Below are positions 18,732 to 45,912 of a stretch of DNA of 64,000 bases, piece after piece. A program made the translations under genes and the position numbers. The notes under the pieces are model-generated. The model saw only the letters and a list, made by a program, of their open reading frames with translations. It had not been told where the DNA came from and ran no database searches. The DNA is taken from positions 1 through 64,000 of the IMG/VR virus record IMGVR_UViG_3300046170_000519; one strand, 5' to 3'. Positions within the stretch are counted from its first letter, which is position 1. Each line of letters begins with the position of its first letter.

Positions 18732-19172
18732 TTAAATTATTTGTTGTATTGCTTCTTGTGATATTCCAGATGGAGTATGAATTGTTTTTATACCAACTTC
18801 ATTAGCATCGTCAATAATTGTTTGAAGATCATCTATTAATAATATGTTTTTATATTCACAATTAAACTTTTTTTTAGTTTCTTCTATGTGATATCTTTTA
18901 GATGGATAAGAGGGATGAATTACGATAATATCAAAAAATTTTTTTTCAAAGATATATGATAAATAATTTTTACAGATCTCTGCAGCTGGACTTGCTGAAG
19001 CTATTCCTACTTTATAACCTTTATTCTTTAAAGATTTGATTACATCTACAGCATTCGGCATCAACATGCTTTCAACTTGTTGTTTTGATAAAATCTTTGA
19101 AGCCCAACTGTCAAATCTCCATATAGTTCTATCTAGATCTATTAATACTATTTTTATTTCTTTTGTGTTCAT
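18732..19172 (-). CDS. HAD-superfamily phosphatase, MDP-1-like (146 aa)
   Basis: Motif I DLDRTIW, motif II IAS, K in motif III, motif IV LIDD. Confidence 0.75.
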   Translation of the reverse strand: MNTKEIKIVLIDLDRTIWRFDSWASKILSKQQVESMLMPNAVDVIKSLKNKGYKVGIASASPAAEICKNYLSYIFEKKFFDIIVIHPSYPSKRYHIEETKKKFNCEYKNILLIDDLQTIIDDANEVGIKTIHTPSGISQEAIQQII

Positions 19173-20098
19173 ATTTTTAAAATTCTTTTATCTATATAGT
19201 ATTGTATGTCGCAGTGCCACATTTCAGGTCCATATTCAAGAAGTATTGGAATTAGGTTTTCGGATCTTTTTCGCCCCCCTGAAAATATAAACTGACAACT
19301 TCTAGGGAACTCATGAGATAATACTCTCATTTGATGCCATACAAAAGTTAAATTTGATTTATGCGGAGAAAAGGAATTATTTCTAATAATTTTTTCAATA
19401 GAACTTTCCACAACAATATATAAAAATGAGTCGAAAGCTACAGCTCTTTCAAGTTCTTTTTTAAATCTTTCAAACCCTACAGTCATAGTAGATTTAAAAT
19501 CTGTTTCACTTTTCCTGTCAATGTATGTATGTTTATAATCCTCTCCTGATGCCGTGTAGTCTCCAAAGTCTAATTTTTGAAGTCTAGAATTAGGGAACTT
19601 TAATGGAGTTTGCTCTCTAGTGTCAATCAATATCTCTATGTCATTTAAATTTTTATTTTCTTTTAAAAATTTACTTTTAATAATTTTATTTAATAATGGC
19701 TCCACTTGGAGCCTCCTACAGGCTTCGCTGTAGGATTTAAAATATAATTTATATATTTCTATTTCAGGTAAATTAAGTAATTTTAATTCTAAATGATTTG
19801 GCGCGTATTGCAAATTTTTGCTAATTATTCTTTTTTGTAATATATCTAATAATATTTGTTGAACATGTTCATGGTCAGCTGTCGCTGCCCATTTTTCTAA
19901 TTCAACATTATTCGAAAAATAAGTAGAAAAATATTGATCTTTATTTTTAAAAGGAATTAATTCATTAGTATATAAATTATATCTAGGATAATATGTTGTA
20001 TAATATTCAGAAAGCAAAATTCCATGAGCTTTTATATGAGTGTGGAGAGAACGCTCACTTTTAAATTTTGACCCGCATATTTTACATGTTATACTCAA
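19169..20098 (-). CDS. C2H2 zinc finger + ERCC4 (XPF/Mus81-type) nuclease (309 aa)
   Basis: N-terminal CKICGSKFKSERSLHTHIKAH; ERCC4 signature IDTREQ...GDY...IDRKS..DF. Confidence 0.8.
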   Translation of the reverse strand: MSITCKICGSKFKSERSLHTHIKAHGILLSEYYTTYYPRYNLYTNELIPFKNKDQYFSTYFSNNVELEKWAATADHEHVQQILLDILQKRIISKNLQYAPNHLELKLLNLPEIEIYKLYFKSYSEACRRLQVEPLLNKIIKSKFLKENKNLNDIEILIDTREQTPLKFPNSRLQKLDFGDYTASGEDYKHTYIDRKSETDFKSTMTVGFERFKKELERAVAFDSFLYIVVESSIEKIIRNNSFSPHKSNLTFVWHQMRVLSHEFPRSCQFIFSGGRKRSENLIPILLEYGPEMWHCDIQYYIDKRILKI

Positions 20099-24373: not shown

Positions 24374-24408
24374 TTGACGTGAAGCTCTTTTTTGTTTAGT
24401 TTGTATAT
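24374..24408 (+). promoter_or_regulatory. Leaderless sigma70 promoter (type example)
   Basis: TTGACG-N17-TAGTTT-N6-ATG(24409); the same geometry recurs at about 20 genes. Confidence 0.85.
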
Positions 24409-25117
24409 ATGAACATTACTAAAGGATTAAAAGTCGGAAGCCTTTACCACTCAAAGGTTAATAATAAAGTTGTTCGTCTCGTGTCTATCGACAGAGTCGG
24501 ATCTCAACGGATCGCAACGATCAAGCATCATGCGCAAAATCATCTTTTCGAGTCAGAGGTTTTTATCTCTGACCTAATCAAGGCAACTGCCGATCAAGTC
24601 AAGGCTTACTTTAAAAGGTAAGTCTTGACACAACACACAAGGAAAGGTAAAAAAGAAATGATTAAAATACTACGAAACCCTAACTTTTCAAATTGGTTTG
24701 ACATTCGCCTTTTTGGGGAACTAATAGACAACGCAAAATCACAAGCAAAAGCCTTGCAAATTGCAAAACAAATAAAACGAAACAATCCACATTTTCAAAT
24801 CGTAACAGAGGGAGAAACAAATGCGTAAAGTAACAGAAAGAATTAAACAAGCCTTTGAGCAAGGCACTTCTCTAAAGGTCGGCAACACAAGAACAGACGG
24901 CACAAGCGTCTTCTTGCATGGTAACGAGATAATCAAACGAGATGAAAGCGGGCTTGTAATGGCTACGCTTGCAGGATGGAACACGCCAACCACAAGGGAA
25001 AGAATCAACGGCATAACAGGATTGGGCATCTACCAAAAGAACTTTGCTCCTATGCTAAACGGGCAAGAAATTGACGAATACGATTGGGTGACGCATACAG
25101 AGGAGGTGTATGTATGA
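24409..25117 (+). CDS. Three small early genes (24409-24621, 24658-24828, 24821-25117), hypothetical
   Basis: Tightly packed co-oriented ORFs after a leaderless promoter; the third has the motif HGNEI...TLAGWNTPTTRERIN. Confidence 0.7.
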
Positions 25118-25175
25118 CTTGCATAATCCTCTTATCCATTGCATTATACTTCTACTCTAAATAAAATAAGCCGCC

Positions 25176-25248
25176 TAAGTGACTGAATAACAAGCACTTA
25201 GAGCGCGGCGCTGCCGCGTGACCTAAGTACTTAATAAACAACAACTTA
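25176..25248. repeat. Double-arm IHF-consensus element E1 (25+23+25 bp)
   Basis: TAAGTGACTGAATAACAAGCACTTA-gagcgcggcGCTGCcgcgtgacc-TAAGTACTTAATAAACAACAACTTA. Confidence 0.9.
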
Positions 25249-25364
25249 CGAAAGTCTCGTACAGAAATCATGCCAATTCATGTAATAGAATAATGCAATA
25301 AAATAGTTGCCAAATAATTCAAAATAAATTTGACTTTAGTTAATAGATGCTTTAGTTTATATAT

Positions 25365-26273
25365 ATGAAATCAATATACAATACAGACACAGAAGAATTT
25401 ACTTTTAACTTTTTAATGAGCATCGAGGGTGCAACTTATAGAATCGAAGCCGTAGCTTGTCAAGATGACATCTTGCTGAGCGAACAATATCGTCCCGAAT
25501 ATATCGACGTTTATATGGCTAAATTAATAAATGACAAAACAGGTGAATTTATAGAATCAAGCATCTATAAAAACACAGATCTTTTAAAGGTTGTGAGCGA
25601 CAAGCTCACAGAAAGGCTAATTACAAATGCAAGCAAAACTTGGTTTGTTACTGATGCGCCAAGGCTTTTCCGTGAGCAATTCGACACTTGCCTTGAAATA
25701 ATGTTTCAAAAATAATTCAAAATAAATTTGACAAAAGTTAAAAAATAGACGATAGTAAGGTATGACAGAAATAAAAATAGAATTCGACGAAGTAAACAAT
25801 GAAGAGTTTTCCGCCTATGCTGAAGTAGGCGAGGAATACTACGAACTGCAAGGCACAACATGGACAGATGAGCAAGAGTCTCTTTATGGAGATCAAGTCT
25901 CAGCCGTTCACTTAGTGGCTTACTTTGATACTCTTGAAAGCGTGAAGCGCTTCGATGGCAACGGCAAACAAATTGATTCAATGAACTTGGATCTTATCAA
26001 AGCAATTAAAAAAGAACTTAATAAAAACATGGATGAAGAGATAGGATCACACTCTTGCCGTGTTGACTACTCGCCACAATACTACGACCTAATCTAATCA
26101 TGGAATACATAAAAAACACGATCAACAAATTAAGAACTCAAATCATGGCATTGAATAGCGAAAGAATCAAGGCAATGAAATTGAACAATAAAAAGAAGGC
26201 TTCAGACATTGAAGCTATACAAATAGAATTAGACAATCAAATAGCACGATTGGAAGGTCTCGCACACCGATAA
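25365..26273 (+). CDS. Early genes 25365-25715, 25762-26097, 26100-26273, hypothetical
   Basis: Leaderless promoters TTGACT-17-TAGTTT-6-ATG and TTGACA-17-GATAGT-5-ATG, each preceded by the identical 23-mer aaataattcaaaataaatttgac; the last ORF (57 aa) was translated by hand. Confidence 0.75.
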
Positions 26274-26284
26274 GATCAGCCCCC

Positions 26285-26357
26285 TAAGTTACTGATAACC
26301 AAGCACTTAGGTCAGGGCGCCGCGCTGCGCTGTAAGTGCTTAATAAGCAACTACTTA
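26285..26357. repeat. Element E2 (25+23+25 bp)
   Basis: TAAGTTACTGATAACCAAGCACTTA-ggtcagggcGCCGCgctgcgctg-TAAGTGCTTAATAAGCAACTACTTA. Confidence 0.9.
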
Positions 26358-26455
26358 TATAACTCCATAAATCTAGTTTAAAATTGCATAATCCCGCCAC
26401 CACTAAAAAGTTGCACTATTTGACTATTTGGTATTTAAATAAAAAAACAAAAAAA

Positions 26456-27236
26456 ATGAAAATAAATCCGTATTTGCTTGCAAAACACGCACTACTAGTT
26501 TACCTTGTTTTTATGGATAAGATCAGAATCAATCATGTAATCGGAGTCAATGGACTTCTTGAATTTTCACGCGACGAAAAGTCGGGCATATCCCTGTGGG
26601 AAGATGTTGCAAATAATGTTTGGACTTGGGATCAAATAGTCGAAGCATCTAAAGATGTAACAAATAAAGAAATCATCGACGCCATGAAAGTAGATGGACA
26701 CATCACTGAGCCATGCGTAAATGATCTTTTAAATATACTAAAATAAAATTTGCAATTATATCATAACTCGTTTACCTTATATATATGAAAGCTAATACAG
26801 ACACCATCTCAATCGTTGACCTAATCGAAAACGAATCATATAAAAATCACCAAGCTTACAACTTAGCAAAAGCTCTCTTGGACATTGCGGTTCAAGCAAG
26901 ATCCATAAAAAACACAGTTTCAGAAAACATTTCAGGCGATGGAAAAGTGTTCAATGAAAATGTTGATAAATGGATGACCGAAATCAACAACATTGCAAAC
27001 AATGTGGTAAGGGAAGAAATGTTAACCAAATAAGGAGGGAATAAAATATGAATAAACAACAAATACTAGAAAAAATTTCCGCCCTTCACGAAAAACTCAA
27101 GAACTCTGTTCTTGCTCCTGCTGATGCCGTTGCTATCCGCAATGAAATCGGAGAGCTTGAGGATAAGGTCTCTCTTCTCGACTTTTACAACGACGAAGGG
27201 GATTATGATTATGGCTACCACTCCCAATGGGAGTAA
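26456..27236 (+). CDS. Early genes 26456-26746, 26785-27033, 27048-27236, hypothetical
   Basis: 26785 has TTGCAA-17-TACCTT-6-ATG; 27048 has an SD (aggagg). Confidence 0.7.
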
Positions 27237-27305
27237 GCCTTTGATAATCAACTACTTACATCGCCGCGCAGCCAAGCACCTAAGTGCTTGGCAGTCAACA
27301 ACTTA
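27234..27305. repeat. Element E3 (25+22+25 bp) at the convergence point
   Basis: TAAGCCTTTGATAATCAACTACTTA-catcgccgcGCAGCcaagcacc-TAAGTGCTTGGCAGTCAACAACTTA; both ends are stop codons of converging genes. Confidence 0.92.
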
Positions 27306-27716
27306 CTCTTCTAGTAGCCATGCATCGAGAGCTTCTGTGTCGATGTCTGGGTCATCATATTGAGCCCCATCAGGTGTGGACTCGAATCCATATTCAACTT
27401 TAAGATGTTCAACTAAATCTTTATAATATGCAAACCTGCGAGATAAAAAATAAAGATGTTCATCATTCCCTAACCAAAGAGCAACATTCCAGGTCGCCCA
27501 GTTTTTCCAGCCGTTGTAAGTATCCATAATTTAATAAACGAGTTGTGAGTTAATAGCTAATTGATCAATCATATCTTGAATATGTTCTTTTTCATTTTCT
27601 GCATTGATTACTAACTGCATCGAGTTAATACAACCTTGATCTGCGGCATCTGTCTCATTGTTAATAATCTGCTGAAGTTCGTTAATTCTGTTAAATAAAT
27701 CTTTTAATGTTTCCAT
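27303..27716 (-). CDS. Early genes 27303-27527 and 27531-27716, hypothetical
   Basis: Leaderless promoter TTGCAA-17-TATCTT-6-ATG(27716); first has the motif NGWKNWATWNVALW. Confidence 0.75.
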
Positions 27717-27759
27717 GATAGTAAGATAATTAAAAATAGAAATAATTGCAAGAAAAAAA

Positions 27760-27966
27760 TTAAAATTTTAATGCTTTTAGCGATGTGTTTCTTTTTAACC
27801 ATCTACGCAATGGGTGAAATGCTCTTGCACTAAAATGAGCGAGATACTGCTCTCCGTTTTTGGCAAGGATCATATGCCCGCTTGCAGTTTCACGGATCTT
27901 TTCGATTTCAGGGCATTTCCGTAATTGTTTTAACACTTTGCGAGTTCCACTTTCTGAATGTTTCAT
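27760..27966 (-). CDS. Small basic protein, possibly HicA-like (68 aa)
   Basis: Leaderless promoter TTGTGT-17-TAGCTT-6-ATG; RETASGHMIL...H pattern. Confidence 0.6.
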   Translation of the reverse strand: MKHSESGTRKVLKQLRKCPEIEKIRETASGHMILAKNGEQYLAHFSARAFHPLRRWLKRNTSLKALKF

Positions 27967-28027
27967 AAGTACAAGCTAAAGCAAAAAATAAAAATACACA
28001 AGAAAAAAGTGAATAAAAATGCTTTCG

Positions 28028-28100
28028 TAAGTCTTTGATTATAAAGCTTTTAAGGGTTAACGCAGCCGACTGCCCTAAGTGCTTGATAATCAACTACTTA
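28028..28100. repeat. Element E4 (25+23+25 bp)
   Basis: TAAGTCTTTGATTATAAAGCTTTTA-agggttaacGCAGCcgactgccc-TAAGTGCTTGATAATCAACTACTTA. Confidence 0.92.
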
Positions 28101-28300
28101 GGACAGCCACACATGCAGACTACGACAACTAATACGACTAAAAAATTATTTGCGAGTTTTCGTATTTGCTATTTTTAGTTTTAATCTTTTGTATATATAT
28201 ATAATAGTATTGACAAGATAATAATTATTGGAATCATTCTTCTTTTAAATCTTGCCACATTAAGTAAAAAACAAAAAGCCAAGGAGTGAAAAATAATAAT

Positions 28301-28984
28301 TCAACTATCATAATATATTCCTTTCATTTCATCGGATAATCCGATTTCTTCATCTTCCTCATCAACATCTTCAGCGACATCAGTAAGTAAGAATTGAGTT
28401 TCATCTGTAATGTCATCTCTCTCGACATCTTTTAATCCATGCTCGACAACTAATTGTTCTGCTTGTAAGTCTGCGACTAATTCTAATACTGAGGAATCAG
28501 TTGGCAAACCTTTGGATTCACGATGTGCGTTAGCGATAACTGCGAGTCTTTGTTCTTCTGTCATAGTAATAATATAGTTTAGTTTTGTTTAGTCGTCAAG
28601 CCCTAATTCTCTTCTAAATTCTGCTTTGTCTTCAATTAGCTCATCAACCCAAACGCTTCCTTCGACTTGAGCTTTTGCCATTAGGATAGATACTTGAGCA
28701 GGAGATTGCCAACCGACAACATCATCAGAAGGAGAAAGAGGAATCATGCCGTTTTTATCGTAGATTGCAACTTCGTACAAACCTTCTTTTAAGCTTCCAT
28801 ATAATCCTTTATAGTCATCTTTACCTGCAATAACAGAAATTTCTAGTCCGTTGCCAAAGTCAAGTTTTGCATGGACTGCTTCATCATGATAACGATGTGG
28901 TTTAAAATCAAGATCGTCAAAGTCTAGCATTGAAGGTTTTGGTTGAAATTGTGAGATTGAGTTTGGTATGTCGTAGTTAATCAT
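28301..28984 (-). CDS. Early genes 28301-28564 and 28589-28984, hypothetical acidic proteins
   Basis: Each has a leaderless promoter (TTGACG-17-TATATT-6-ATG; TTGCGT-17-TAATGT-6-ATG). Confidence 0.8.
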
Positions 28985-29046
28985 ATAAACACATTAAACT
29001 CTTTTAACAATTAACGCAAGAAAAAACTTAAATAAAAATGCTTTCG

Positions 29047-29118
29047 TAAGTCGTTAACTGTTAGGCAGTTAGCTTTGGCGGCAGCCAGCCACCTAAGTGA
29101 TTGACTATAAAGGATTTA
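29047..29118. repeat. Element E5 (25+22+25 bp)
   Basis: TAAGTCGTTAACTGTTAGGCAGTTA-gctttggcgGCAGCcagccacc-TAAGTGATTGACTATAAAGGATTTA. Confidence 0.88.
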
Positions 29119-29119
29119 C

Positions 29120-29890
29120 CTATCTTAATACTGTTGTCAACTCATTTTGAAATTTTTTTGCTTCAACTAAATCTTTTAAGTCAAAACTAATTGCAACAAG
29201 ATTGTCGTTAATATTCTTCATTACCTTGACAAGGTCGTCCATGTTTGCATAACGTCTATGCTCTAACATCTCATCTGATAATCCGTCAATGGCTTGTTTA
29301 ATTCCTTTTAATTCTTCTTTCATTTTAATGTTTACCTTTCTTTATAAAATTTTCTAAATAATATGCAACCCACTCAATAGCTTCATTTTGTTTTGATGCC
29401 TCCTCTTTCATTTCAGGATCGTCAATAACGTTTTGATTGGCTAGGTCTAATACAATTTCTAATGCTGTTGTGATATTCATGATATATAAGCTGTTACTTT
29501 GTTGTGTGTTAATAAAACTTCGTCCGCATAGTACGCAAACCTTTCGGTGTCCTTCTCAACGAAAGTTTCATACTTGTAGGGATTGTACGTTACCTCGACT
29601 TCCCTAGTGGCAACTTGTGGATTACGAGATACATTTTCTGCATCTTGAAGATACCCTTTGACAAAAGCATGAACATTCTTACGCTTCTCTCGAAGAACTT
29701 TTTCTCTGCCCTTAATATCGACATGAAAATAGCAATCCCATAATCCAATAGCATGATCCTTTGGGATATGAGCTTTGACTAATCCATGTTGCTTAATGCT
29801 CCAACAATCTTTGTGAAGATTCTTGTAAACATAAACAGGGCGATTCTTTTTAATTCTATATCGTGGGTCTTGCTGGTTTCTTAGTATCAT
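29120..29890 (-). CDS. Early genes 29120-29323 and 29477-29890 (a short ORF probably lies between), hypothetical
   Basis: 29890 has TTGCTA-17-TAGTAT-6-ATG; motif VYVYKNLHK...KRKNVHAFVKG...VTYNPYK. Confidence 0.75.
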
Positions 29891-29952
29891 GTAGACATAC
29901 TAAGCCATTTTTTTAATTATAGCAAGAAAAAAGTTTAGTAATTTTACTTACC

Positions 29953-30024
29953 TAAGTATCTTGTATTCAAGTACTTATGTTTTTGCGCAGCCGCCGCCAC
30001 AAGTGCTTGATAATCAAGGCTTTA
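29953..30024. repeat. Element E6 (25+22+25 bp)
   Basis: TAAGTATCTTGTATTCAAGTACTTA-tgtttttgcGCAGCcgccgcca-CAAGTGCTTGATAATCAAGGCTTTA. Confidence 0.9.
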
Positions 30025-30201
30025 GTACCCTAACCACTCAAGAACTTTTTGGGCTGAGTACCCTTCCTTGTCACCCATGTCTTCAAAAAATTCAATAATT
30101 TCCTCACTGGAAGTAATGCCGTGCCTGGCTAATTCCTCTAAGGCACGATCTTGTGAAATGTCAATTCCTTGGGCTGAGTCAAAATAAGTTTCTTCATTCA
30201 T
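30022..30201 (-). CDS. Hypothetical acidic protein (59 aa, below the ORF-track cutoff)
   Basis: MNEETYFDSAQGIDISQDRALEELARHG...QKVLEWLGY*; its stop is the last 3 bp of E6. Confidence 0.7.
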   Translation of the reverse strand: MNEETYFDSAQGIDISQDRALEELARHGITSSEEIIEFFEDMGDKEGYSAQKVLEWLGY

Positions 30202-30216
30202 GGCTTTAATTATAGA

Positions 30217-30942
30217 TTAATGAGCTAAATATGCAATACCTTTTTTGCATCCTTTGATAAAACATAAGTTGCAATTATGAGCTTTACAAGTTGCAAGAAC
30301 CTTGCCGTCTTCGCCCTTAACATAAGTTGCGGGGCAAACAAAATGACCATCTTGCTCGGCTTGCTCTTTTGAGCTATAGACGGAAGTTCCCGCATCTAGA
30401 CCATCGATTTGTGGAGCGGGTTCATCAACATACAAGGCACTTGGTTTTAAGCATACATTCTTTAAACTTGCGAGCTTGCGAAGTGAAGGTAATTGACTAT
30501 CCCTTGCCCACTCACGAGTTGGAAACCAAAAGCGAATGGTGGGAAAGTTTTCGCAAATCTTAATCCACGCCTCAATATACTTTGGGGAAAACAAGTCGCC
30601 TGAATCATGAACGCGAAAAAGATCTGTGTTGACATTCTTTAAAACTTTTTTGTTGCCTTGCTTGTCAAAATACTTTGCGGTAATTTGCTTGGATATCTCA
30701 TTTACAAAAGTTTGCCCATTGTCTCGATGCAAAGACTTGGTGACAAAATTTGCCTTGTCTTGCAAACTTTGTTTAACATTGTTAAACATATAAAAACCTT
30801 TGCAAGCATAACAAGCATCACAAATAAACTTTTTTGCTTTGTCTTTGACTTTTGCCATAAGTTGAGCTGCTGGGCAATACTTGAAAGCGGGAATGTTAAA
30901 GCCTAAGCAAGGCATTTTAGAAGGATTTGATAGTAAGTTCAT
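30217..30942 (-). CDS. Gp88-like phage protein (241 aa)
   Basis: SKMP...CP...CDACYA and FRVHDSGDLF...FWFPTR motifs; leaderless promoter TTGCAT-17-TAGTTT-6-ATG. Confidence 0.65.
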   Translation of the reverse strand: MNLLSNPSKMPCLGFNIPAFKYCPAAQLMAKVKDKAKKFICDACYACKGFYMFNNVKQSLQDKANFVTKSLHRDNGQTFVNEISKQITAKYFDKQGNKKVLKNVNTDLFRVHDSGDLFSPKYIEAWIKICENFPTIRFWFPTREWARDSQLPSLRKLASLKNVCLKPSALYVDEPAPQIDGLDAGTSVYSSKEQAEQDGHFVCPATYVKGEDGKVLATCKAHNCNLCFIKGCKKGIAYLAH

Positions 30943-30969
30943 AATAGTAAACTAAAATAATTTTAACAA

Positions 30970-31170
30970 TTATGCAAGCGAAAAAATAAGATCTTCAAAG
31001 AAATCTGGTTCTAAGCCGAATTCGCTGGTAAATGTCTCTTCCCATTCAAACGGATCTCCGCCCATTGCAATGTCTTCAGACATTTCACGAAAAAAGGTTG
31101 CGGTTTGGTGAATAGCATCTTCACGGGAAAGCCCGTCACGCTCCATAAGTATCTTGATTATTCTTTTCAT
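30970..31170 (-). CDS. Hypothetical protein (66 aa)
   Basis: TTGCGT-17-GATATT-6-ATG; motif ILMERDGLS...EFGLEPD. Confidence 0.75.
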   Translation of the reverse strand: MKRIIKILMERDGLSREDAIHQTATFFREMSEDIAMGGDPFEWEETFTSEFGLEPDFFEDLIFSLA

Positions 31171-31231
31171 GATAACAATATCTCACAAAAAATAATTTAA
31201 CGCAAGAAAAAATGAATTAAAAATACATCCG

Positions 31232-31303
31232 TAAACCCTTGATGCTTAAGCAGTTAGCTCGCGCCGCAGCCGCTTCCATAAGTGCTTAATAATCAAATAC
31301 TTG
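31232..31303. repeat. Element E7 (25+22+25 bp)
   Basis: TAAACCCTTGATGCTTAAGCAGTTA-gctcgcgccGCAGCcgcttcca-TAAGTGCTTAATAATCAAATACTTG. Confidence 0.88.
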
Positions 31304-31322
31304 TGAAACACTAAATCAACCC

Positions 31323-31350
31323 AAAAAAAAAGCCCCCCAATCGGGGGGCT
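31323..31350 (-). terminator. Rho-independent terminator
   Basis: agcccccc-aatc-ggggggct hairpin with a 9-nt U-tract on the minus strand. Confidence 0.9.
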
Positions 31351-31373
31351 AAAACGAAACAACAAACCAATAT

Positions 31374-32246
31374 TTAAACCTCTATCAATTCGCCCTCAGC
31401 AACTTCTATGTCAATAGTATTATCAACATGATTATCTATATCGAAATCGACATAACTATCGAGAACAGAATGAAGAGCGTCTGAACGATTTGGCAAGGCA
31501 ACTAAGTTACCTTTATAAATTTCAGTAAAAGCATTATAGAGAGAATTTACATTACGATCCTTAAATTCTAAATGGTCACTTGACTCCCATTGATCTGCCA
31601 CATCAAGAATTTTTGACTTAGGTAAAGCCCCTGCACGAACTGCTTTGATGATTAAATCATGAGCAAGAACATTCCCGATAGAATGATTTTTATAAGCATT
31701 GATTCTTTCATCTTGTCCATGCCAAAAGCCAAACAATTTACCCAAAGCACGATTGATCATAAAATCAAGATCGTTAAGTATGTTGCGAGTATGTCTACGA
31801 GCAAGTTTAATAGTGTTTGTGAAAATTAAATTATCGCAAACAAATGGAGCATCACCTGCGCAAAGTCCTGCAGGAAAAGTTTTGTCATGAGAATTGCGAA
31901 CTCCTACGACACAACCACGATCTGATTCGTCACGATCAGGATGATCAACAGAGAATAGACCAAAGTAATGTTGGTTATCTCTAGCGAGAGAATGTAATTC
32001 GTCTTGAATAGTAAACCCTCTCTTGACAAGAGAATCTTTAGTACGAACAACAAGCTCGTCATGAGCAATGGGCTGATGAGAAACGGCAAGCTCACCTGTT
32101 CTCTTGTTTGGTTTGTTGCGCATTGTAGGTAATGGAGTTGGTACTGCTTGTACTTGATCAAAATCTACGATTGTGCGATTGCCTCCACAAATGTGTAAAT
32201 CTACGGATTTGCGAGGAGCGGTATTAGTGTTTTCTTCTGTATTCAT
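31374..32246 (-). CDS. DUF932-family protein (290 aa)
   Basis: YFGL...VGVRNSHDKTFPAGLCAG...FVCDNLIF...RRHT motif; TTGACA-17-TATATT-6-ATG. Confidence 0.7.
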   Translation of the reverse strand: MNTEENTNTAPRKSVDLHICGGNRTIVDFDQVQAVPTPLPTMRNKPNKRTGELAVSHQPIAHDELVVRTKDSLVKRGFTIQDELHSLARDNQHYFGLFSVDHPDRDESDRGCVVGVRNSHDKTFPAGLCAGDAPFVCDNLIFTNTIKLARRHTRNILNDLDFMINRALGKLFGFWHGQDERINAYKNHSIGNVLAHDLIIKAVRAGALPKSKILDVADQWESSDHLEFKDRNVNSLYNAFTEIYKGNLVALPNRSDALHSVLDSYVDFDIDNHVDNTIDIEVAEGELIEV

Positions 32247-32284
32247 GATAGTAATATAATAGTTTTAATGTTTTTTGTCAAGAG

Positions 32285-32518
32285 TTAATTTTTAGAATAT
32301 TGGTTTTCTTCTGAGGTTAGCATTTCAAATGCATAAGCTTTTTTAGCTATATCTCGTAAGGCTAAACCAACCCAACTAATTTCATCTAAATCTTCTACGG
32401 AAAGATTTTTAGCATGAGGTGTTACTAGAATATCCCAAATGGATTTCATGCAATCTTTGTTTAGCTCTAAAGAGTTGAAATCGGGCAACTCATCCACATT
32501 TTGTTTAATTACATACAT
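32285..32518 (-). CDS. Hypothetical protein (77 aa)
   Basis: ORF track; SD aaggag upstream. Confidence 0.65.
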   Translation of the reverse strand: MYVIKQNVDELPDFNSLELNKDCMKSIWDILVTPHAKNLSVEDLDEISWVGLALRDIAKKAYAFEMLTSEENQYSKN

Positions 32519-32633
32519 AGTTTAGATTCTCCTTGTGTTTTAGTTTTCTGTGTATCGTTTTAGTTTTGACTTTGTGAGGTCTTGATTTAGTGAAAAGAAT
32601 GGTTTTTCTGATCTTAATGTCTCTCGCTTTCAT
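32505..32633 (-). CDS. Very basic 42-aa peptide, ArfA-like pattern
   Basis: MKARDIKIRKTILFTKSRPHKVKTKTIHRKLKHKENLNYVCN*; dedicated promoter TTGCTA-17-TAGTAT-6-ATG. Confidence 0.65.
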   Translation of the reverse strand: MKARDIKIRKTILFTKSRPHKVKTKTIHRKLKHKENLNYVCN

Positions 32634-32696
32634 GTAAACATACTAAGCTAATTTTTTAATTATAGCAAGAAAAATAACAAATAATTTTAACTTTTT

Positions 32697-32768
32697 TAAT
32701 TCCTTGTGTATCAAGCACTTAGAGCGCGCGGCAGCCAGCCACATAAGTGACTGATAATCAAAAGGTTA
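32697..32768. repeat. Element E8 (25+22+25 bp)
   Basis: TAATTCCTTGTGTATCAAGCACTTA-gagcgcgcgGCAGCcagccaca-TAAGTGACTGATAATCAAAAGGTTA. Confidence 0.9.
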
Positions 32769-32927
32769 TGATCTACCTGAATAAAGCTTATATAATAGAT
32801 TGTCGTGCATCGCTCTTTTTTCCTTATAATCTTTCGATTGGTCCCCCGCTTGCTCTCTAATGGCTAGCATGTGACCTAATTTTCTTACAATTTGCTTTAA
32901 GGTTAAGACTTCTTTATTTTTTTTCAT
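32766..32927 (-). CDS. Hypothetical protein (53 aa, below the ORF-track cutoff)
   Basis: MKKNKESLTLKQIVRN...LYKLYSGRS*; its stop is the last 3 bp of E8. Confidence 0.6.
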   Translation of the reverse strand: MKKNKEVLTLKQIVRKLGHMLAIREQAGDQSKDYKEKRAMHDNLLYKLYSGRS

Positions 32928-32929
32928 AA

Positions 32930-33160
32930 TTAGATTTTATTAAGAGATATAATTTGGTCGTATCGAAAGGATCGTATGCCGTCCCTATTTAGACAAAAAG
33001 ATCTAAAGCCAACAACCCCCCTTCCTTCTTGTTGATTGCCAAACTCATTTTCGTGCTGAGGTTTGGTTATTGTGTACATTTCAGTTCTGCCGTCTTTAGT
33101 CTGATAAACAACTTGATATAACGGATTAAACCAACGATAAATTTTAGTCAATAATTTCAT
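32930..33160 (-). CDS. Small WYL-like (SH3-fold) protein (76 aa)
   Basis: VVYQTKDG...GFRSFCLNRDGIRSFRYDQI resembles the WYL RxFRxDRI signature. Confidence 0.5.
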   Translation of the reverse strand: MKLLTKIYRWFNPLYQVVYQTKDGRTEMYTITKPQHENEFGNQQEGRGVVGFRSFCLNRDGIRSFRYDQIISLNKI

Positions 33161-34205
33161 CTTCGACATCCTCTCTTGCGGGGTTTTGGTTGTAGTGATT
33201 GTAAGCATCGCAAGCTGAATCTGCCGACTCGAAACTCACGGATAGAATATCTCTTGGAATATCGTACGGAAACCAAGGTGTTTCTGATTCTTCAAAAAAT
33301 AATTCCCATTGCTCAGTATCTTCGTTGTATTCAGGTAAATCTAGCGGACTGCCGATGCAGGTTGCTTCTATGTAATTATTCATTTTCATTATCCTCTATG
33401 TTATAGACTCCGAAGTGAGACGCAAGCTCTAAAATCATTTTATCTTTGTTAAAATAACGATAGGCAAAAGAAAGTAAATCCTCTTGTTGTTTTCTCGTAT
33501 GCCCATCTCTAAGTTCATCATAAATCTCAAAGATATTCATGTTCCAATTCCAACTCTCTACTCTCGCTTCTACTTGTGATGCTGTCATTATACTGCCCTT
33601 TCGTTTACTTGTTCTAACATAAGTTTAAATTGATCAAAAACTTTTTGCTTGCTACCTTTGAGACCAAACTCTTGTTTGATGATAGAATAGCAAGATCTGC
33701 CTCGACTCATTTGCATACCTAAAGTCTCAAGCCTTAAACCTCTGAGAAGAGTTTTGTAGCGAAACATTTCGATTTGTTCGGGTGTGTCTAATACTGCTGT
33801 CATAATTTTCCTTGTGTTATAGTTGTGCTGATTGAAAAGATGATTCTATTCTACGTTCATCTTGTAATGCTGTCAAGTCCCTAATGATATCTTCTAAAGA
33901 TTCATCCTCCGATTGGAATGAGCTACCCTTCGGGAACTTGTCAGGGTGGCGTTCGCATTGGTCGAGACAAACTGTTGACATGGGATCCGACCATGCGAGG
34001 TTGCCTCTAACGATATCCATAATTGATTCTGATAATGTCATTGTTTTGCCCTTTCGTTTTGGTCGTCTACAATCTTTGCGAGGCGAAGTAATTCTTGGGT
34101 TACTTCTGCTTTTGCGGTGTTGTTTGCTTGTGGGCTTTTCAACACCTCGACCATAACAGGAACGAGTGCTGACCATGTTGGTGTGATATCTATTGTTTCT
34201 TGCAT
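33144..34205 (-). CDS. Early operon of small hypothetical genes: 34038-34205, 33817-34041, 33588-33803, 33376-33588, 33144-33389
   Basis: Leaderless promoter TTGACA-17-TAGTGT-6-ATG(34205); ATGA overlaps couple the genes. Confidence 0.7.
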
Positions 34206-34266
34206 ATAAACACACTAAGGGAATTTTTAGTTGCTGTCAAATAAAAAGAAAATAAAAATGCTTTTG

Positions 34267-34339
34267 TAAGTTGTTGAATTTTAAGCAGTTAGGGTTTATC
34301 GCAGCGCTCCGCTTTAAGTGCTTGACTATCAACACTTTA
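34267..34339. repeat. Element E9 (25+23+25 bp)
   Basis: TAAGTTGTTGAATTTTAAGCAGTTA-gggtttatcGCAGCgctccgctt-TAAGTGCTTGACTATCAACACTTTA. Confidence 0.9.
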
Positions 34340-34704
34340 TACAATCACCTTGTTCCTAACATTACTTAATAATTCTTCATAATTTTTATTATATTTATAT
34401 TATTTGTTATTTATTATTTGTTATTATTTATACTAATGTTATTTATTATATATCCAGGACTGGGTAGTAATTTATTATTTTGGTAATACATATTATCCCA
34501 TGTACATTCTATTTGATATGCGTCAAGATACCAAGGTATTAACCAATGGTAAGCAAGAAAGAATGCAAAATATATAAAAATAAACATAAAAAAATAATTT
34601 ATTATTTTAAATGAGAATTTAAGAATCATAATCCATAAGTAATTTAAAACCAAGAACGATAGACATTATTATCACTATTTCCATATTATATATTGTTATT
34701 ATTG

Positions 34705-34959
34705 TTATTTGGCTATAGCAAAAACTGTTCTTAAGAGATCCATCTCTCGACCCCTGAAGAAAACATTACGACAGTAATCGATATCGTTTTTTTCTACTTC
34801 AGTGATGCGAGCAGCTGCCCTCCAAGCTTCGATAACCTCTCTCTCCATGGCTCCCCACTTAATAACTACTTTAGTGCAGGGAAAGTGCTCTGCGAGCTCA
34901 GTTAACTGTTTTTTGTTCATATAACCATATGATGATAGAATTTCTTTTATTGTTTCCAT
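34705..34959 (-). CDS. Hypothetical protein (84 aa)
   Basis: TTGACC-17-TAGAGT-6-ATG leaderless promoter. Confidence 0.75.
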   Translation of the reverse strand: METIKEILSSYGYMNKKQLTELAEHFPCTKVVIKWGAMEREVIEAWRAAARITEVEKNDIDYCRNVFFRGREMDLLRTVFAIAK

Positions 34960-34995
34960 AATAATACTCTAGTATAAAATATTAATATGGTCAAA

Positions 34996-35035
34996 CAAAA
35001 AAGCCCCCCTCGATCATCCATGGATCGAGGGGGGC
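34996..35035 (-). terminator. Strong Rho-independent terminator after the candidate ncRNA
   Basis: gcccccctcgatc-atccatg-gatcgaggggggc 13-bp stem, U-tract on the minus strand. Confidence 0.9.
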
Positions 35036-35052
35036 GAGTGTTCAGAGGAAAT

Positions 35053-35240
35053 TGGTGTGGGGAGGGATTACTGTATACCCTCAAGTTTTCGGCGTGAACA
35101 TCAGTTCATGGTGTACCTACTTCCAACCACAAATTAGACATGGTATTTGTCATCGGCTCATTCGATTGAACTCTACCGCCCCACCACAGGGAATTTGCAT
35201 ACCTTAACCCGCTCACGACAGGTTTATTCGGTCACCCACA
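35053..35240 (-). ncRNA. Candidate tRNA-like structured RNA (~188 nt, 3' ACCA)
   Basis: TATAAT 6 nt upstream; 5' GUGGG pairs with 3' CCCAC-A-CCA; T-arm-like GAGGG/CCCUC; several internal hairpins; terminator downstream; no ORF. Confidence 0.65.
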
Positions 35241-35364
35241 GGAAGGATTATAAGCCCTTCCAAAGTGATAAAAAATATTAAAGAACAAAAATTTTGAGGC
35301 TATTTTATTTATTTGAGTCGCCTCTTCTCAATCATGGATGATACTTACTATAATACTAAAAAAA

Positions 35365-36057
35365 TTACCTTTTGTCAACTATTAAATGGTTTCTATCAAA
35401 TATAATTGTATTTTCATCGATTAGTTTTTTATACTTTATTTCCTTTTTAAAATCTTCGAGTAATAAAAATTTGTAACCTAATTTAGATTCTTCTTTTGTT
35501 CTGTAAGCATGATATTCACTTTCCACTATAGGCAAGCTTCTGCACATCAATGCTTCATAAAATCTGAAACTCCAAGTAGCATCACCTGCTGGACACAGGC
35601 AGTATTTACTTTGACACATTATTTGAAGATATTCTTTATCATTTTCTAAGGGGTTGTATCTTAAATTTTGCAAATCTTTAGTGAGGGTGCGATTATTTCT
35701 AGGGTTATATCCTTTACCCGAATTTGTATAATCAAATGAACCTAAACTTTTCCAATTAGGTTCATCATCTGTATTTAAAAAATACGATTTGTTTGTAAAA
35801 TTTTTTTTTGCAAATTCTATAACCCACTGTCTGTTATTTTTAATTCCTTTTGAATTTATTGTCCCCATAAAGCAATAGTCATAAATCTTTTTTCTTGGCA
35901 ATTTGTGGACTTGTTGGTAAAATCTCTTCGAGAATTTAGCTATCGGAGGGTTTGCAACCACATTTTCAGGATTTAACCCCTCTTCCCTTAAAGCTTCTTC
36001 CATCTGATATTTAAACTCTAAATATCCAGAACCTCCTTGAAATTTGCTAGGACTCAT
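35365..36057 (-). CDS. Exostosin-like (GT47) glycosyltransferase (230 aa)
   Basis: MCQSKYCLCPAGD..WSFRFYEAL.C..LPIV signature. Confidence 0.75.
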   Translation of the reverse strand: MSPSKFQGGSGYLEFKYQMEEALREEGLNPENVVANPPIAKFSKRFYQQVHKLPRKKIYDYCFMGTINSKGIKNNRQWVIEFAKKNFTNKSYFLNTDDEPNWKSLGSFDYTNSGKGYNPRNNRTLTKDLQNLRYNPLENDKEYLQIMCQSKYCLCPAGDATWSFRFYEALMCRSLPIVESEYHAYRTKEESKLGYKFLLLEDFKKEIKYKKLIDENTIIFDRNHLIVDKR

Positions 36058-39224: not shown

Positions 39225-40409
39225 TTAAAAGGGAGTATCTTCAATAACTATTTGACGAGAACCTAAAGGTAAGAGAGAGGCATCATAGCTAGAGTCAACC
39301 ATCACATCGTCTAATTTTGAAACTATTTTAGCGACGCCATTATACCCCACATGATTATTTTTGCATATCCTTAAATCAGCAATTTGTTTAATAGTTGGAT
39401 TTATATTTGATAAATGTTTTTTATTAATATAATTTTTTATAGAAATCTCTACTAAATCTGAATCTTTTACTAAATCATCATCATCATCATCATCATAATT
39501 ATCATGTTCATCAAGATCATATTCAATACCCGAACCATCATCAACATTTGATTCCATATCTACATAATCTGAATCATCATCGTAATTTTCATCATCATTA
39601 TCATCATCTGATCCATAAATAGGCTTATTAGCCTCGTAGACAGGTTTATTTAACTCTTTTCTTGCATCAGTAATATCAGAGATTACCTTATACTTAGAAA
39701 CTCTAAGTTTTTGAAAATCGCAATCAGTTGGTACAGATACTGCATCAGCAGGATCAAACTCTACTAGAAGCAACTTTCCACCTTCTCCTGCCCAACTATC
39801 AGCATAATCAAATGAACCAACATGAAGACCAAAAGAGCAATGATTATCCTTATTATCATCTACACATCTGCGAGCAACTTCAATTGTTGCACCAACCTCA
39901 TTGAGAATTTGATGGCGAGCATTGGTTTTGCCTTGCAATACGATAGTGTCAGCATTGCCTGTTGTACTCCAATAATCGGATTGTACACCTTTGTAGCCCA
40001 AAACTTTACCTTCGGGAGTATTCGCAAGAGACTTATAACTCATAAAAGAATAAAGTTCATTTACTGAATTTGCACTTGGATTAGCTTGTAAGCGAGTAAT
40101 AAAATTGGTGAGGGGGGCAGAATCTTTCATTCCTGCACGAAGCATATCGAGCAATTTATCAACAACAACGCCATGTAAACGATGACCTTTATAATAAACA
40201 ACTTCGTCTTTGACTTCAATATCGCCTTCAACAAAATTTTCAACCGCCTTAACAACATCAATAAGATCACCAAGATCGTCATACCTAGCATCAAGAATAG
40301 CTTTCTTGGCAAGTTGGAAGTTCACATGATCCTTGCGGATTGTGTGGGGTTTACCTTCCCAAAAGATTGTAATTGAATTTTCTGTTAACTGATATGGTAC
40401 TTGATTCAT
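39225..40409 (-). CDS. rIIB: RIIB-like protein (394 aa)
   Basis: FITRLQANPSANSVNELYSF...TPEGKVLGYKGV...RRCVDDNKDNHCSFGLHVG...DAVSVPTD....KLRVSKYKV; adjacent to rIIA. Confidence 0.85.
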   Translation of the reverse strand: MNQVPYQLTENSITIFWEGKPHTIRKDHVNFQLAKKAILDARYDDLGDLIDVVKAVENFVEGDIEVKDEVVYYKGHRLHGVVVDKLLDMLRAGMKDSAPLTNFITRLQANPSANSVNELYSFMSYKSLANTPEGKVLGYKGVQSDYWSTTGNADTIVLQGKTNARHQILNEVGATIEVARRCVDDNKDNHCSFGLHVGSFDYADSWAGEGGKLLLVEFDPADAVSVPTDCDFQKLRVSKYKVISDITDARKELNKPVYEANKPIYGSDDDNDDENYDDDSDYVDMESNVDDGSGIEYDLDEHDNYDDDDDDDLVKDSDLVEISIKNYINKKHLSNINPTIKQIADLRICKNNHVGYNGVAKIVSKLDDVMVDSSYDASLLPLGSRQIVIEDTPF

Positions 40410-45837: not shown

Positions 45838-45912
45838 TGGACGCATGGATCAGAATCGAACTGACGAATGGGAGTTTTGCAGACTCCTGCCTTACCACTT
45901 GGCTACCATGCG
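45838..45912 (-). tRNA. trnC: tRNA-Cys (GCA)
   Basis: Cloverleaf: acceptor CGCATGG/CCATGCG, U73 plus encoded CCA, D-arm GCC-AAGTGGTAA-GGC, anticodon arm GGAGT-CTGCAAA-ACTCC, T-arm GTCAG-TTCGATT-CTGAT. Confidence 0.95.

What the first reader, a model, noticed from the sequence alone, without database searches (positions are those of the whole stretch)
27234..32768. Gene stop codons coincide exactly with element termini, like gene cassettes
Seen: at E3 the TAA of plus-strand gene 27048-27236 is the first 3 bp of the element and the stop of minus-strand gene 27303-27527 is its last 3 bp. The stops of 30022-30201 and 32766-32927 are the last 3 bp of E6 and E8. The stop of 29120-29323 lies 1 bp outside E5. 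Established: integron cassette ORFs often end within the attC inverse core. Inference: promoter-gene-element units may be exchanged as modules, or the elements insert at or are built on TAA stops. E3 also separates convergent transcripts with no conventional terminator, so the elements may act as roadblocks.
Basis: partly seen in the sequence, partly recalled or inferred. Interest (0 to 1): 0.68.

Follow-up and report, generated by a model that had tools for sequence, protein, structure and literature searches.

The report
Palindromic linkers that shuffle phage gene cassettes
Nine conserved 72-base palindromic spacers close the early-gene blocks of an uncultured marine giant phage, and related phages carry the same blocks in different orders with the joins inside these spacers, so the spacers mark where self-expressed gene cassettes are swapped.

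Summary
Four of the ten gene ends that face an element in the window stop exactly in its outer TAA, and a fifth lies 1 bp away. In six related genomes, 22 of 48 nearby gene ends do the same.

The elements are nine 72-73 bp dyad-symmetric repeats. Each has two 25-bp palindromes flanking a GC-rich core (GGCWGCC). They occur only at 25.2-34.3 kb of a 206-kb seawater phage genome, always at gene 3' ends. Six of them sit 26-28 bp upstream of a sigma-70-like promoter.

- The blocks between elements stand in at least five different orders in eight related genomes.
- Gene neighbours separated by an element stay neighbours in 8 of 57 comparisons, against 87 of 115 without one.
- Five of six mappable crossovers include the GC core.
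- One seawater DNA contig lacks cassette D exactly, from element core to element core.

No tyrosine, serine or HUH recombinase and no RecA was found. No base-pair covariation supports a hairpin function. The half-sites fit the IHF consensus, which is a lead only.

The closest known system is the PeSL "mobile regulatory cassettes" of T4-like phages. This phage is not T4-like, and its linker differs in architecture and crossover position. The stop-codon coincidence is most simply a by-product of compaction against an invariant TAA.

The parts
25176..25248 (+). Element E1. Palindrome A 25176-25200, GC core with GCTGC at 25210, palindrome B 25224-25248. It follows gene 24821-25117. The next promoter starts at 25330.
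26285..26357 (+). Element E2. It lies 11 nt after the stop of gene 26100-26273. The next promoter starts at 26478.
27234..27305 (-). Element E3, at the convergent junction. Both outer triplets are the stop codons of 27048-27236 (+) and 27303-27527 (-). No promoter is adjacent.
28028..28100 (-). Element E4, the joint between cassettes F and G. It is a hybrid of the two elements that flank an extra mini-cassette in relative G006.
29047..29118 (-). Element E5, the joint between cassettes D and F. The stop of 29120-29323 lies 1 bp outside. Its core GGCAGCC ends at 29086, which is the left end of the natural 914-nt deletion joint.
29953..30024 (-). Element E6, the joint between cassettes C and D. 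Its last triplet is the stop of 30022-30201. Position 30001 is the right end of the natural deletion joint.
31232..31303 (-). Element E7, the joint between cassettes B and C. Its outer triplet is CAA, not TAA. It is preceded by a canonical intrinsic terminator.
32697..32768 (-). Element E8, the joint between cassettes A and B. Its last triplet is the stop of 32766-32927. A contig from an RNA library spans it.
34267..34339 (-). Element E9, the first element of the minus-strand array. It lies upstream of cassette A.
32766..34240 (-). Cassette A. Promoter -35 at 34240-34235, leaderless ATG at 34205. Genes 34038-34205, about 33817-34041, 33588-33803, 33376-33588, 33144-33389, 32930-33208 and 32766-32927.
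31331..32668 (-). Cassette B. Promoter 32668-32631. Genes 32505-32633, 32285-32518 and 31374-32246. Own intrinsic terminator at 31350-31331.
30022..31205 (-). Cassette C. Promoter 31205-31168. Genes 30970-31170, 30217-30942 (Pfam GP88) and 30022-30201.
29120..29925 (-). Cassette D, the most mobile block. Promoter 29925-29888. Genes 29477-29890 (Pfam Phage_L5_gp82), 29325-29480 and 29120-29323. It sits at a different place in each relative and is absent here in one seawater contig.
28301..29019 (-). Cassette F. Promoter 29019-28982. Genes 28589-28984 and 28301-28564.
27303..28001 (-). Cassette G. Promoter 28001-27964. Genes 27760-27966, 27531-27716 and 27303-27527.
24374..27236 (+). Plus-strand island of three blocks separated by E1 and E2. 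Leaderless-type promoters start at 24374, 25330, 26478 and 26750.

Best explanation
**What the elements are.** They are conserved, dyad-symmetric intergenic linkers that close each early-gene cassette in a lineage of uncultured marine giant phages.
- Each has two 25-bp palindromes. Their four half-sites share the consensus TAAGTNNTTGAT, which is the reverse complement of WATCAANNACTTA.
- The palindromes flank a GC-rich mini-palindrome centred on GGCWGCC.
- The elements lie only where a gene ends (tandem or convergent junctions). In the minus-strand array they sit a fixed 26-28 bp upstream of the next sigma-70-like promoter.

**Shown.** The gene blocks between elements are permuted, gained and lost among relatives. 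The recombination joints lie inside the elements, mostly in the GC core. Each element is therefore a mosaic: its 5' half is inherited with the upstream gene and its 3' half with the downstream promoter.

**Inferred.**
- The exchanges arise by recombination between the conserved sequences of different elements. This would be either short-homology recombination or breakage of the palindrome centre followed by ectopic repair. It yields deletions, presumably circles, and re-insertions of self-expressed cassettes, as proposed for the PeSL cassettes of T4-like phages.
- The elements also insulate neighbouring transcription units, or bind a DNA-bending protein.

**The stop-codon coincidence is a by-product.** The outermost triplets of the element are a near-invariant TAA/TTA. 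Loss of spacer DNA brings an ORF to end in that TAA and no further.
For: **Family and location.**
- There are nine copies, only at 25.2-34.3 kb of 206 kb.
- The same family occurs in arrays of 7-13 copies in about eight further distinct viral contigs.

**Cassette order.**
- G000: A B C D F G.
- G006: A D B C F mini G.
- G001: B D A C F G.
- G002 and G010: D A B ...
- G003 and G004 differ again.

**Breakpoints fall on elements.**
- Adjacency is conserved in 8 of 57 gene pairs with an element between them, against 87 of 115 without. Fisher p = 6e-15, though the pairs are not phylogenetically independent.
- Against the closest diverged relative the figures are 3 of 6 versus 15 of 15.
- Three-way alignments show the element of the D|B joint in G006 is the left half of E5 plus the right half of E8. 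The C|F joint is E6 left plus E5 right. E4 is the left half of one G006 element plus the right half of the next.
- Five of six crossover intervals contain GGCWGCC.
- A seawater DNA contig joins 29086 (E5 core) to 30001 (E6), skipping 914 nt, which is cassette D.

**Position relative to genes and promoters.**
- Elements are never found at the divergent junction near 24.3 kb, only at gene ends.
- The spacing from palindrome B to the -35 hexamer is 26-28 nt for E4-E9.
- The outer TAA is near-invariant, and gene stops pile up on it.
Against: - The mechanism is not shown. No circles or back-joints were seen, but only assembled contigs could be laid and they drop rare forms.
- One of six crossovers lies at the 3' border of palindrome B, not in the core.
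- Across the more distant genomes the linkage of element halves to their flanks is weak. The left half gives p = 0.002; the right half is not significant.
- Gene-precise deletions also occur away from elements (27531-27760 and 29325-29475), so elements are not the only route of change.
- No recombination protein of a recognised family (RecA/UvsX, tyrosine, serine, HUH) was found in the genome.
- The insulator/terminator function is untested, and no U-tract follows the stems.
Confidence: 0.7

Rival explanations
1. The elements are primarily binding sites for a DNA-bending or regulatory protein. This would be host IHF, whose consensus WATCAANNNNTTR each half-site fits, or an unknown phage early regulator. 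The protein would organise or regulate the early promoters. Recombination at the elements would then be a side effect of repeated sequence.
For: - The same positions are invariant in all four half-sites: CA of ATCAA 98-100%, TT 98-100%, R 97-100%.
- 12 of the 27 exact WATCAANNNNTTR matches in the 64-kb window lie in the 9 elements, which make up 1% of the DNA. The whole window would give 12.6 matches by chance.
- Departures from the palindrome are not compensated: pairing equals that of column-shuffled controls.
- The two strands fold equally well.
- The distance to the -35 hexamer is fixed.
Against: - The match to IHF is a resemblance to a consensus recalled from the literature, not a binding test.
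- The host is unknown, and no HU/IHF-family gene is in the phage.
- E3 has no promoter next to it. E1 and E2 lie 81 and about 121 nt from the next -35.
- Many promoters inside cassettes work without an element.
- This rival is compatible with the main explanation rather than exclusive of it.
Confidence: 0.3
2. The elements are sites of a dedicated site-specific recombination system, an integron-like cassette array. An unrecognised phage or host recombinase would cut and rejoin in the GGCWGCC core, with the palindromes as protein-binding arms.
For: - Five of six crossover intervals share the invariant core.
- The natural deletion joint runs from core to core.
- The architecture is symmetric arms around a short conserved centre.
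- Cassette D occupies five different slots in eight genomes.
Against: - No Phage_integrase, Resolvase or Y1 transposase domain is present in the 206-kb genome.
- One crossover lies outside the core.
- The crossover intervals are 10-20 nt wide, and the core is also one of the longest stretches of identity between copies, so short-homology recombination predicts the same picture.
- In the natural joint, 8 letters next to the core differ from both G000 parents.
Confidence: 0.12
3. The elements are transcription terminators or RNA 3'-end or processing hairpins, bidirectional at E3. They would insulate the cassettes. Their role in shuffling would be incidental, exactly as in the PeSL stem-loops.
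For: - They are always at gene 3' ends, including the convergent junction, and never at the divergent one.
- Single sequences fold into long hairpins of -14 to -39 kcal/mol, with z-scores mostly between -1.5 and -6 (overall range -0.2 to -8.2).
- The central GC segment folds somewhat better than shuffles, mean z = -0.9.
Against: - No U-tract follows the stems, while canonical terminators do exist in the same region (31350-31331 and 35035-35003).
- E7 lies directly behind such a terminator, here and in three relatives.
- RNAalifold finds no consensus structure.
- There is no covariation beyond column composition.
- There is no sense-strand bias in G-U versus A-C pairs or in stability.
- A contig from an RNA library spans E8 (32426-32901), though DNA carry-over cannot be excluded.
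- No Rfam family matches.
Confidence: 0.2
4. The elements are small mobile elements (MITE-like) that insert at TAA or TA sites, which would explain why stops coincide with their ends.
For: - Terminal inverted symmetry: TAAGT...ACTTA.
- The ends are TAA/TTA.
Against: - They are confined to one 9-kb region of 206 kb.
- They are absent from 185,579 representative prokaryote genomes apart from chance hits.
- The two halves are inherited with different flanks.
- No filled-versus-empty site pair was seen. What varies between genomes is whole cassettes.
- No transposase was found.
Confidence: 0.04

Closest known systems
PeSL (promoter-early stem-loop) mobile regulatory cassettes of T4-like phages (Arbiol et al. 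2010, PMC2839356; Comeau et al. 2014, PMC4122927)
   Same: - A conserved palindromic motif sits directly upstream of an AT-rich tract and a sigma-70-like early promoter.
- It is repeated between small accessory genes in a hyperplastic region.
- Insertions, deletions and replacements between relatives map to the motifs.
- The cassettes are transcriptionally self-contained.
- No dedicated recombinase is known.
   Different: - This phage is not T4-like. It has no Gp23 capsid or T4 portal domain, and its terminase is at most 26% identical to any cultured phage.
- The motif is a 72-bp composite (two 25-bp palindromes plus a GC core) conserved in sequence across diverged genomes. PeSL has a short G-rich stem-loop that acts as a terminator.
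- There is no U-tract.
- Crossovers lie in the centre of the palindromic element. Mapped PeSL crossovers lie in the AT-rich or promoter part, between -10 and ATG.
- The promoters are placed for leaderless mRNAs, whereas PeSLs carry a Shine-Dalgarno sequence.
Integron gene cassettes with attC sites
   Same: - An array of short gene units, each closed by an imperfect palindrome.
- ORFs often end inside the palindrome.
- Units change order and presence between relatives.
   Different: - There is no IntI or any tyrosine recombinase, and no attI/Pc platform.
- The cassettes carry their own promoters.
- The joint lies in the centre of the element rather than at the R' box next to the ORF.
- No strand asymmetry suggests a folded bottom strand.
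BIME/RIP elements (REP palindromes combined with an IHF site) of enterobacteria
   Same: - Composite extragenic palindromes at gene 3' ends.
- GC-rich palindromic DNA is combined with sequences that fit the IHF consensus.
- Copies are dispersed between transcription units.
   Different: - The arrangement is inverted: IHF-like palindromes flank a GC palindrome.
- They are found in a phage, in one 9-kb region only.
- There is no RAYT/Y1 transposase.
- IHF binding is not tested.
Stoperators of mycobacteriophage L5 (repressor-bound intergenic sites that block elongation)
   Same: - Many copies of one conserved site in short intergenic gaps.
- Copies are oriented with transcription.
   Different: - L5 sites are 13-bp asymmetric operators of a known repressor of a temperate phage.
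- Here the sites are 72-bp palindromic composites, no repressor is known, and the link to recombination is the shown property.

Membership tests
PeSL cassettes of T4-like phages | Stem-loop directly upstream of an AT-rich tract and a sigma-70-like early promoter | tested here: met
   E4-E9 end 26-28 nt before TTGNNN-17-TANNNT, with a T-rich tract in between. E1 and E2 lie further away. E3 has no promoter.
PeSL cassettes of T4-like phages | The stem-loop is an effective intrinsic-type terminator (short G/C stem, T-rich tail) | tested here: not met
   No U-tract directly follows the stems. The terminator scan flags none of the elements as terminators for transcription entering from the adjacent upstream gene; its only hit inside an element is a weak 5-pair stem on the minus strand within E1. 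It does find canonical terminators at 31350-31331 and 35035-35003. Function was not assayed.
PeSL cassettes of T4-like phages | Indels and replacements between close relatives map to the motifs | tested here: met
   natural deletion variant
PeSL cassettes of T4-like phages | Host genome is a T4-like myovirus | tested here: not met
   No Gp23 (PF07068) or Portal_T4 (PF07230) match. The structural proteins have no PHROG hits. rIIA/rIIB homologues are present.
PeSL cassettes of T4-like phages | Mini-circles formed by recombination between neighbouring motifs | not testable with these tools
   Only assembled contigs of public runs could be laid. No back-joints were listed.
Integron (attC cassettes) | IntI tyrosine recombinase with attI next to the array | tested here: not met
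   No Phage_integrase match at E <= 1 in 206 kb.
Integron (attC cassettes) | Cassettes are promoterless and are joined at the border of the palindrome (R' core) | tested here: not met
   Every cassette starts with its own promoter. Five of six joints lie in the centre of the element.
REP/BIME with RAYT | Associated Y1 (HUH) transposase | tested here: not met
   No Y1_Tnp match.
IHF binding site | Match to WATCAANNNNTTR | tested here: met
   61 of about 245 half-sites match exactly and 87 have one mismatch. The invariant positions coincide with the core of the consensus.
IHF binding site | Binding and bending by IHF of the host | not testable with these tools
   The host is unknown. The phage has no HU/IHF-family gene.
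Structured RNA element | Base pairs kept by compensatory change | tested here: not met
   RNAalifold predicts no pairs. Paired cells are 67.3% and 73.0%, against 67.1% and 73.5% in shuffles. There is no Rfam match.

The most novel reading that the evidence does not exclude
The array is a phage-borne, integron-like cassette exchange system without a recognisable recombinase. A 72-bp site has IHF-type bending arms and a GGCWGCC crossover core. An unknown phage or host enzyme would cut and rejoin there, or programmed breakage of the palindrome centre would do so. This would let marine giant phages trade self-expressed early (host-takeover or anti-defence) genes as discrete units.
Probability: 0.15. 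Interest if true: 0.85.

Novelty: new variant of a known kind. Interest (0 to 1): 0.62.

Why it matters
Early accessory genes of large phages are where host takeover and counter-defence functions evolve fastest. How they are exchanged is known mechanistically only for the PeSL cassettes of T4-like coliphages and vibriophages.

This case shows the same evolutionary logic in an unrelated, uncultured lineage that is widespread in seawater: self-expressed gene units bounded by a conserved linker. The linker here is much more elaborate and its sequence is conserved. The crossovers can be placed within about 10-20 nt.

That makes one open question directly testable. Is such shuffling a by-product of general recombination at repeats, or a targeted, protein-assisted reaction? 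The case also gives a simple sequence signature for finding exchangeable cassettes in viromes.

Tried and rejected
- **Known RNA families.** An Rfam scan of 24.0-35.5 kb at E <= 1 found nothing at the elements.
- **Consensus RNA structure.** RNAalifold predicts no pairs. Two explicit models, three hairpins or one long hairpin, show no covariation beyond shuffles.
- **Strand test for an RNA or single-strand function.** There is no difference in stability between sense and antisense, and no excess of G-U over A-C pairs.
- **Recombinases and recombination proteins.** Phage_integrase, Resolvase (one sub-threshold hit at E = 0.025, with a stop codon inside the match), Y1_Tnp and RecA were all absent.
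- **An endonuclease VII-like gene next to E9.** The weak PHROG hit (E = 0.0013) rests on an over-extended GTG ORF, 33817-34215. The real gene is about 74 aa, and Pfam finds nothing. Rejected.
- **Restriction-site idea.** The invariant GCWGC core is the site type of some restriction enzymes, but GCWGC is not avoided elsewhere: 150 sites, above expectation. In relatives the centre is GCSGC. Rejected.
- **T4 MotA box.** TGCTT occurs in palindrome B, but it lies near -80, not -30. Rejected by reading the sequence.
- **Origin in bacterial genomes or a host repeat.** A scan of 185,579 genomes gave five single hits, none with a real element.
- **Cultured phages.** blastn with the element plus promoter finds no match. 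The 8-kb region matches only 65 nt in cyanophages.
- **Transcript ends from public RNA runs.** Only contigs were available, and DNA contigs also break at the repeats. Contig ends at elements therefore say nothing.

Full report
**Where the window lies**

The window is the first 64 kb of a 205,857-bp virus record, estimated complete.
- It has about 32% G+C, and nearly all genes are on the minus strand.
- The 5.9-kb stretch 27200-33100 is held almost entirely by at least 16 seawater metagenome runs from 16 studies.
- The genome has a large terminase (16875-18731) and rIIA/rIIB homologues (40507-42795, 39225-40409).
- It has no T4-type capsid or portal domain.
- The other large ORFs scanned in the terminase-proximal part of the window (presumed structural) match no PHROG family, apart from one marginal hit to a family of unknown function.
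- The terminase is at most 26% identical to that of any cultured phage.
- It is therefore an uncultured marine giant phage without close cultured relatives.

**The observation**

There are nine copies of a 72-73 bp element:

| Element | Coordinates | Strand |
|---|---|---|
| E1 | 25176-25248 | + |
| E2 | 26285-26357 | + |
| E3 | 27234-27305 | - |
| E4 | 28028-28100 | - |
| E5 | 29047-29118 | - |
| E6 | 29953-30024 | - |
| E7 | 31232-31303 | - |
| E8 | 32697-32768 | - |
| E9 | 34267-34339 | - |

A profile search of the whole 206 kb finds no other copy.

- Both outer triplets of E3, and the last triplets of E6 and E8, are stop codons of the abutting genes.
- The TAG of 29120-29323 lies one base outside E5.
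- The other five gene ends that face an element are 11 to 199 nt away.

The pattern holds in relatives.
- In six genomes, 22 of 48 incoming ORFs ending within -30..+10 of the outer TAA end exactly on it.
- 22 ORFs that run into the element stop in the TAA frame, against 2 in the next frame.
- This occurs in at least six different gene families.

This is not chance. The TAA is a near-invariant part of the element.

**Anatomy**

Read in the direction of transcription, an element has these parts:
- Palindrome A: TAAGTnnTTGATnATCAAGCACTTA.
- A GC-rich segment of about 22 nt, centred on GGCTGCC. The letters GC.GC are invariant in the 35 aligned copies.
- Palindrome B: TAAGTGCTTGATnATCAACGACTTA.

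The whole unit is itself symmetric about the core. The 3' half of A is the exact complement of the 5' half of B in the consensus. The outer halves differ from each other by one position.

In E4-E9, palindrome B is followed after 26-28 nt by a promoter of the form TTGNNN-17-TANNNT-6-ATG. This interval contains CGAAAGCATTTTTATT and a T-tract.

The same promoter-ATG arrangement precedes many genes inside the cassettes. There are about 16 such gene starts between 24.3 and 35 kb, and 17-20 motif hits per related region where I estimate about 4 by chance. This implies leaderless first codons.

Elements occur at tandem and convergent gene junctions. They never occur at the divergent junction near 24.3 kb.

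**Relatives**

Two pattern scans of IMG/VR, followed by profile searches, found the family in about a dozen viral contigs. These represent about eight distinct genomes besides the window's own. Two further contigs are the same phage. Each genome has 7-13 copies clustered in 10-12 kb, between the rIIB side and the packaging genes.

A scan of one genome per prokaryote species gave only chance hits. Cultured phages gave nothing.

**The decisive result**

The blocks of genes between elements stand in different orders.

| Genome | Order of cassettes |
|---|---|
| Window (G000) | A, B, C, D, F, G |
| G006 | A, D, B, C, F, mini-cassette, G |
| G001 | B, D, A, C, F, G |
| G002 and G010 | D, A, B, ... 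|
| G003, G004 | further arrangements |

In G003 and G004, single genes of D, C or F are combined differently.

Cassette D (29120-29925) carries a homologue of mycobacteriophage L5 gp82. It occupies five different slots.

Breakpoints follow the elements.
- Over all genome pairs, neighbouring conserved genes with an element between them keep their adjacency in 8 of 57 cases.
- Those without an element keep it in 87 of 115 cases (Fisher p = 6e-15). The comparisons are not phylogenetically independent.
- Against the closest diverged relative the figures are 3 of 6 versus 15 of 15.

**The elements are mosaics**

In three-way alignments:
- The G006 element between D and B equals E5 on the left and E8 on the right.
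- The G006 and G001 element between C and F equals E6 on the left and E5 on the right.
- E4 equals the left half of one G006 element and the right half of the next, with a 64-codon mini-cassette missing in between.
- Two further G001 joints behave the same way.

In five of six events the interval between the last left-parent site and the first right-parent site contains the core GGCWGCC. In one event it lies at the 3' edge of palindrome B.

Averaged over the three close genomes, left halves are more alike when the upstream gene is shared: 0.83 against a background of 0.72. Right halves are more alike when the downstream cassette is shared: 0.73 against 0.65. Over all six genomes only the left-half signal is significant.

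**Natural populations**

When contigs of four public runs were laid on 27200-33100, one seawater DNA contig joined 29086 to 30001.
- Position 29086 is the last base of the E5 core. Position 30001 is inside E6.
- The joint skips 914 nt, which is cassette D with its promoter.
- It carries eight differing letters next to the core, which gives an E6-left/E5-right hybrid element.

Other joints remove single genes precisely (27531-27760 and 29325-29475) and are not at elements. No back-joints (circles) were listed, but contigs drop rare forms.

A contig from an RNA library spans E8 (32426-32901). This suggests read-through, if it is RNA at all.

**What the element does besides marking joints is not settled**

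Against a hairpin function in RNA or single-stranded DNA:
- RNAalifold predicts nothing.
- For both explicit models, the share of paired cells equals that of column-shuffled controls.
- The two strands are equally stable.
- No U-tract follows the stems, while canonical terminators exist nearby.
- E7 sits directly behind one of those terminators, here and in relatives.

For some structural constraint:
- Single copies fold into long hairpins.
- The variable GC centre folds slightly better than shuffles, with perfect stems in some copies.

For recognition of double-stranded sequence:
- The same positions are invariant in all four half-sites.
- The half-site fits the IHF consensus WATCAANNNNTTR.
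- 12 of the 27 exact matches in the window fall in the elements.

The IHF match is a lead from a remembered consensus, not a test. The phage has no HU/IHF-family gene.

**Mechanism of exchange**

No tyrosine, serine or HUH recombinase and no RecA/UvsX domain was found.

The clustering of crossovers in the core fits a site-specific reaction. It fits equally well short-homology recombination in the best-conserved stretch, or breakage of the palindrome centre followed by repair from another copy.

I therefore commit to this reading: the elements are conserved linkers at which cassettes recombine. The recombining step itself is marked as inferred.

**The stop codons**

The 5' half of an element is inherited with the upstream gene, and its first triplet is an invariant TAA. 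An ORF that loses its spacer therefore ends in that TAA. It cannot shrink further without damaging either the gene or the element.

This explains the pile-up at offset 0 with a tail of small gaps. It also explains why genes that become last in a cassette in other genomes end the same way (homologues of 29477 and 30970 in G003 and G004).

**Comparison with the known**

The closest system is the PeSL cassettes of T4-like phages: a stem-loop terminator plus an early promoter, linked to indels in hyperplastic regions, with mini-circles shown by inverse PCR.

The logic is the same. Five things differ:
- the phage lineage;
- the size and sequence conservation of the palindromic part;
- the lack of terminator features;
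- the crossover position, which is central here and in the promoter part in PeSLs;
- the leaderless promoters.

Integron attC sites, BIME/RIP elements and L5 stoperators share single traits but fail their defining features.

I rate this a new variant of a known kind.

Noticed in passing
window 35052-35261 (-), followed by 35035-35003 (-): There is a strong match to the Rfam manA RNA motif (RF01745, 88 bits, E = 6.5e-22). A 13-bp intrinsic terminator follows it directly. The short ORFs called there (35052-35207, 35147-35281) are 92-100% conserved in a relative and are probably not genes.
   Followed up: partly
window 24374-35000, e.g. 34994-34957, 32281-32244, 30977-30940, 28599-28562, 27751-27714, 25330-25367, 26750-26787: About 16 gene starts carry TTGNNN-17-TANNNT-6-ATG, so the ATG sits where transcription should start. 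Many early genes, not only the first of each cassette, look individually transcribed as leaderless mRNAs. Other genes, such as 27048, have a clear AAGGAGG ribosome site.
   Followed up: partly
window 27531-27760 and 29318-29476: Seawater DNA contigs lack exactly gene 27531-27716 or gene 29325-29480. The same genes are missing in relatives G006 and G001. These gene-precise deletions are not at elements.
   Followed up: partly
window 28101-28300: A stretch of 199 nt without a convincing gene lies between the stop of 28301-28564 and E4. A similar gap of 182-185 nt is kept in G001 and G006. Its content is unexplained.
   Followed up: no
window 33817-34215 (-) and 26384-26746 (+): Both ORFs are probably over-called. 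The first is likely two genes (34038-34205 and an ORF of about 74 codons starting MTLSES...), as in the relatives. The second probably starts at ATG 26513, behind its own promoter at 26478.
   Followed up: partly
L041 10175-10369 (relative G006): A 64-codon mini-cassette sits between two elements and is absent from the window. Its product resembles the window's 27048-27236 protein (C-terminus ...WGYHAQWDF versus ...YGYHSQWE). Both end in the TAA of an element.
   Followed up: partly
window 35365-36057 (-), 19169-20098 (-), 45838-45912 (-): A GT47/exostosin-like glycosyltransferase domain lies just outside the array. There is also an ERCC4-type nuclease, and the only tRNA gene found in the 64-kb window is a tRNA-Cys.
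   Followed up: no
window 27460-27524: The only DNA similarity of the region to cultured phages is 65 nt at 83% identity. It lies inside gene 27303-27527 and matches a hypothetical gene of 50 Synechococcus myovirus records.
   Followed up: no
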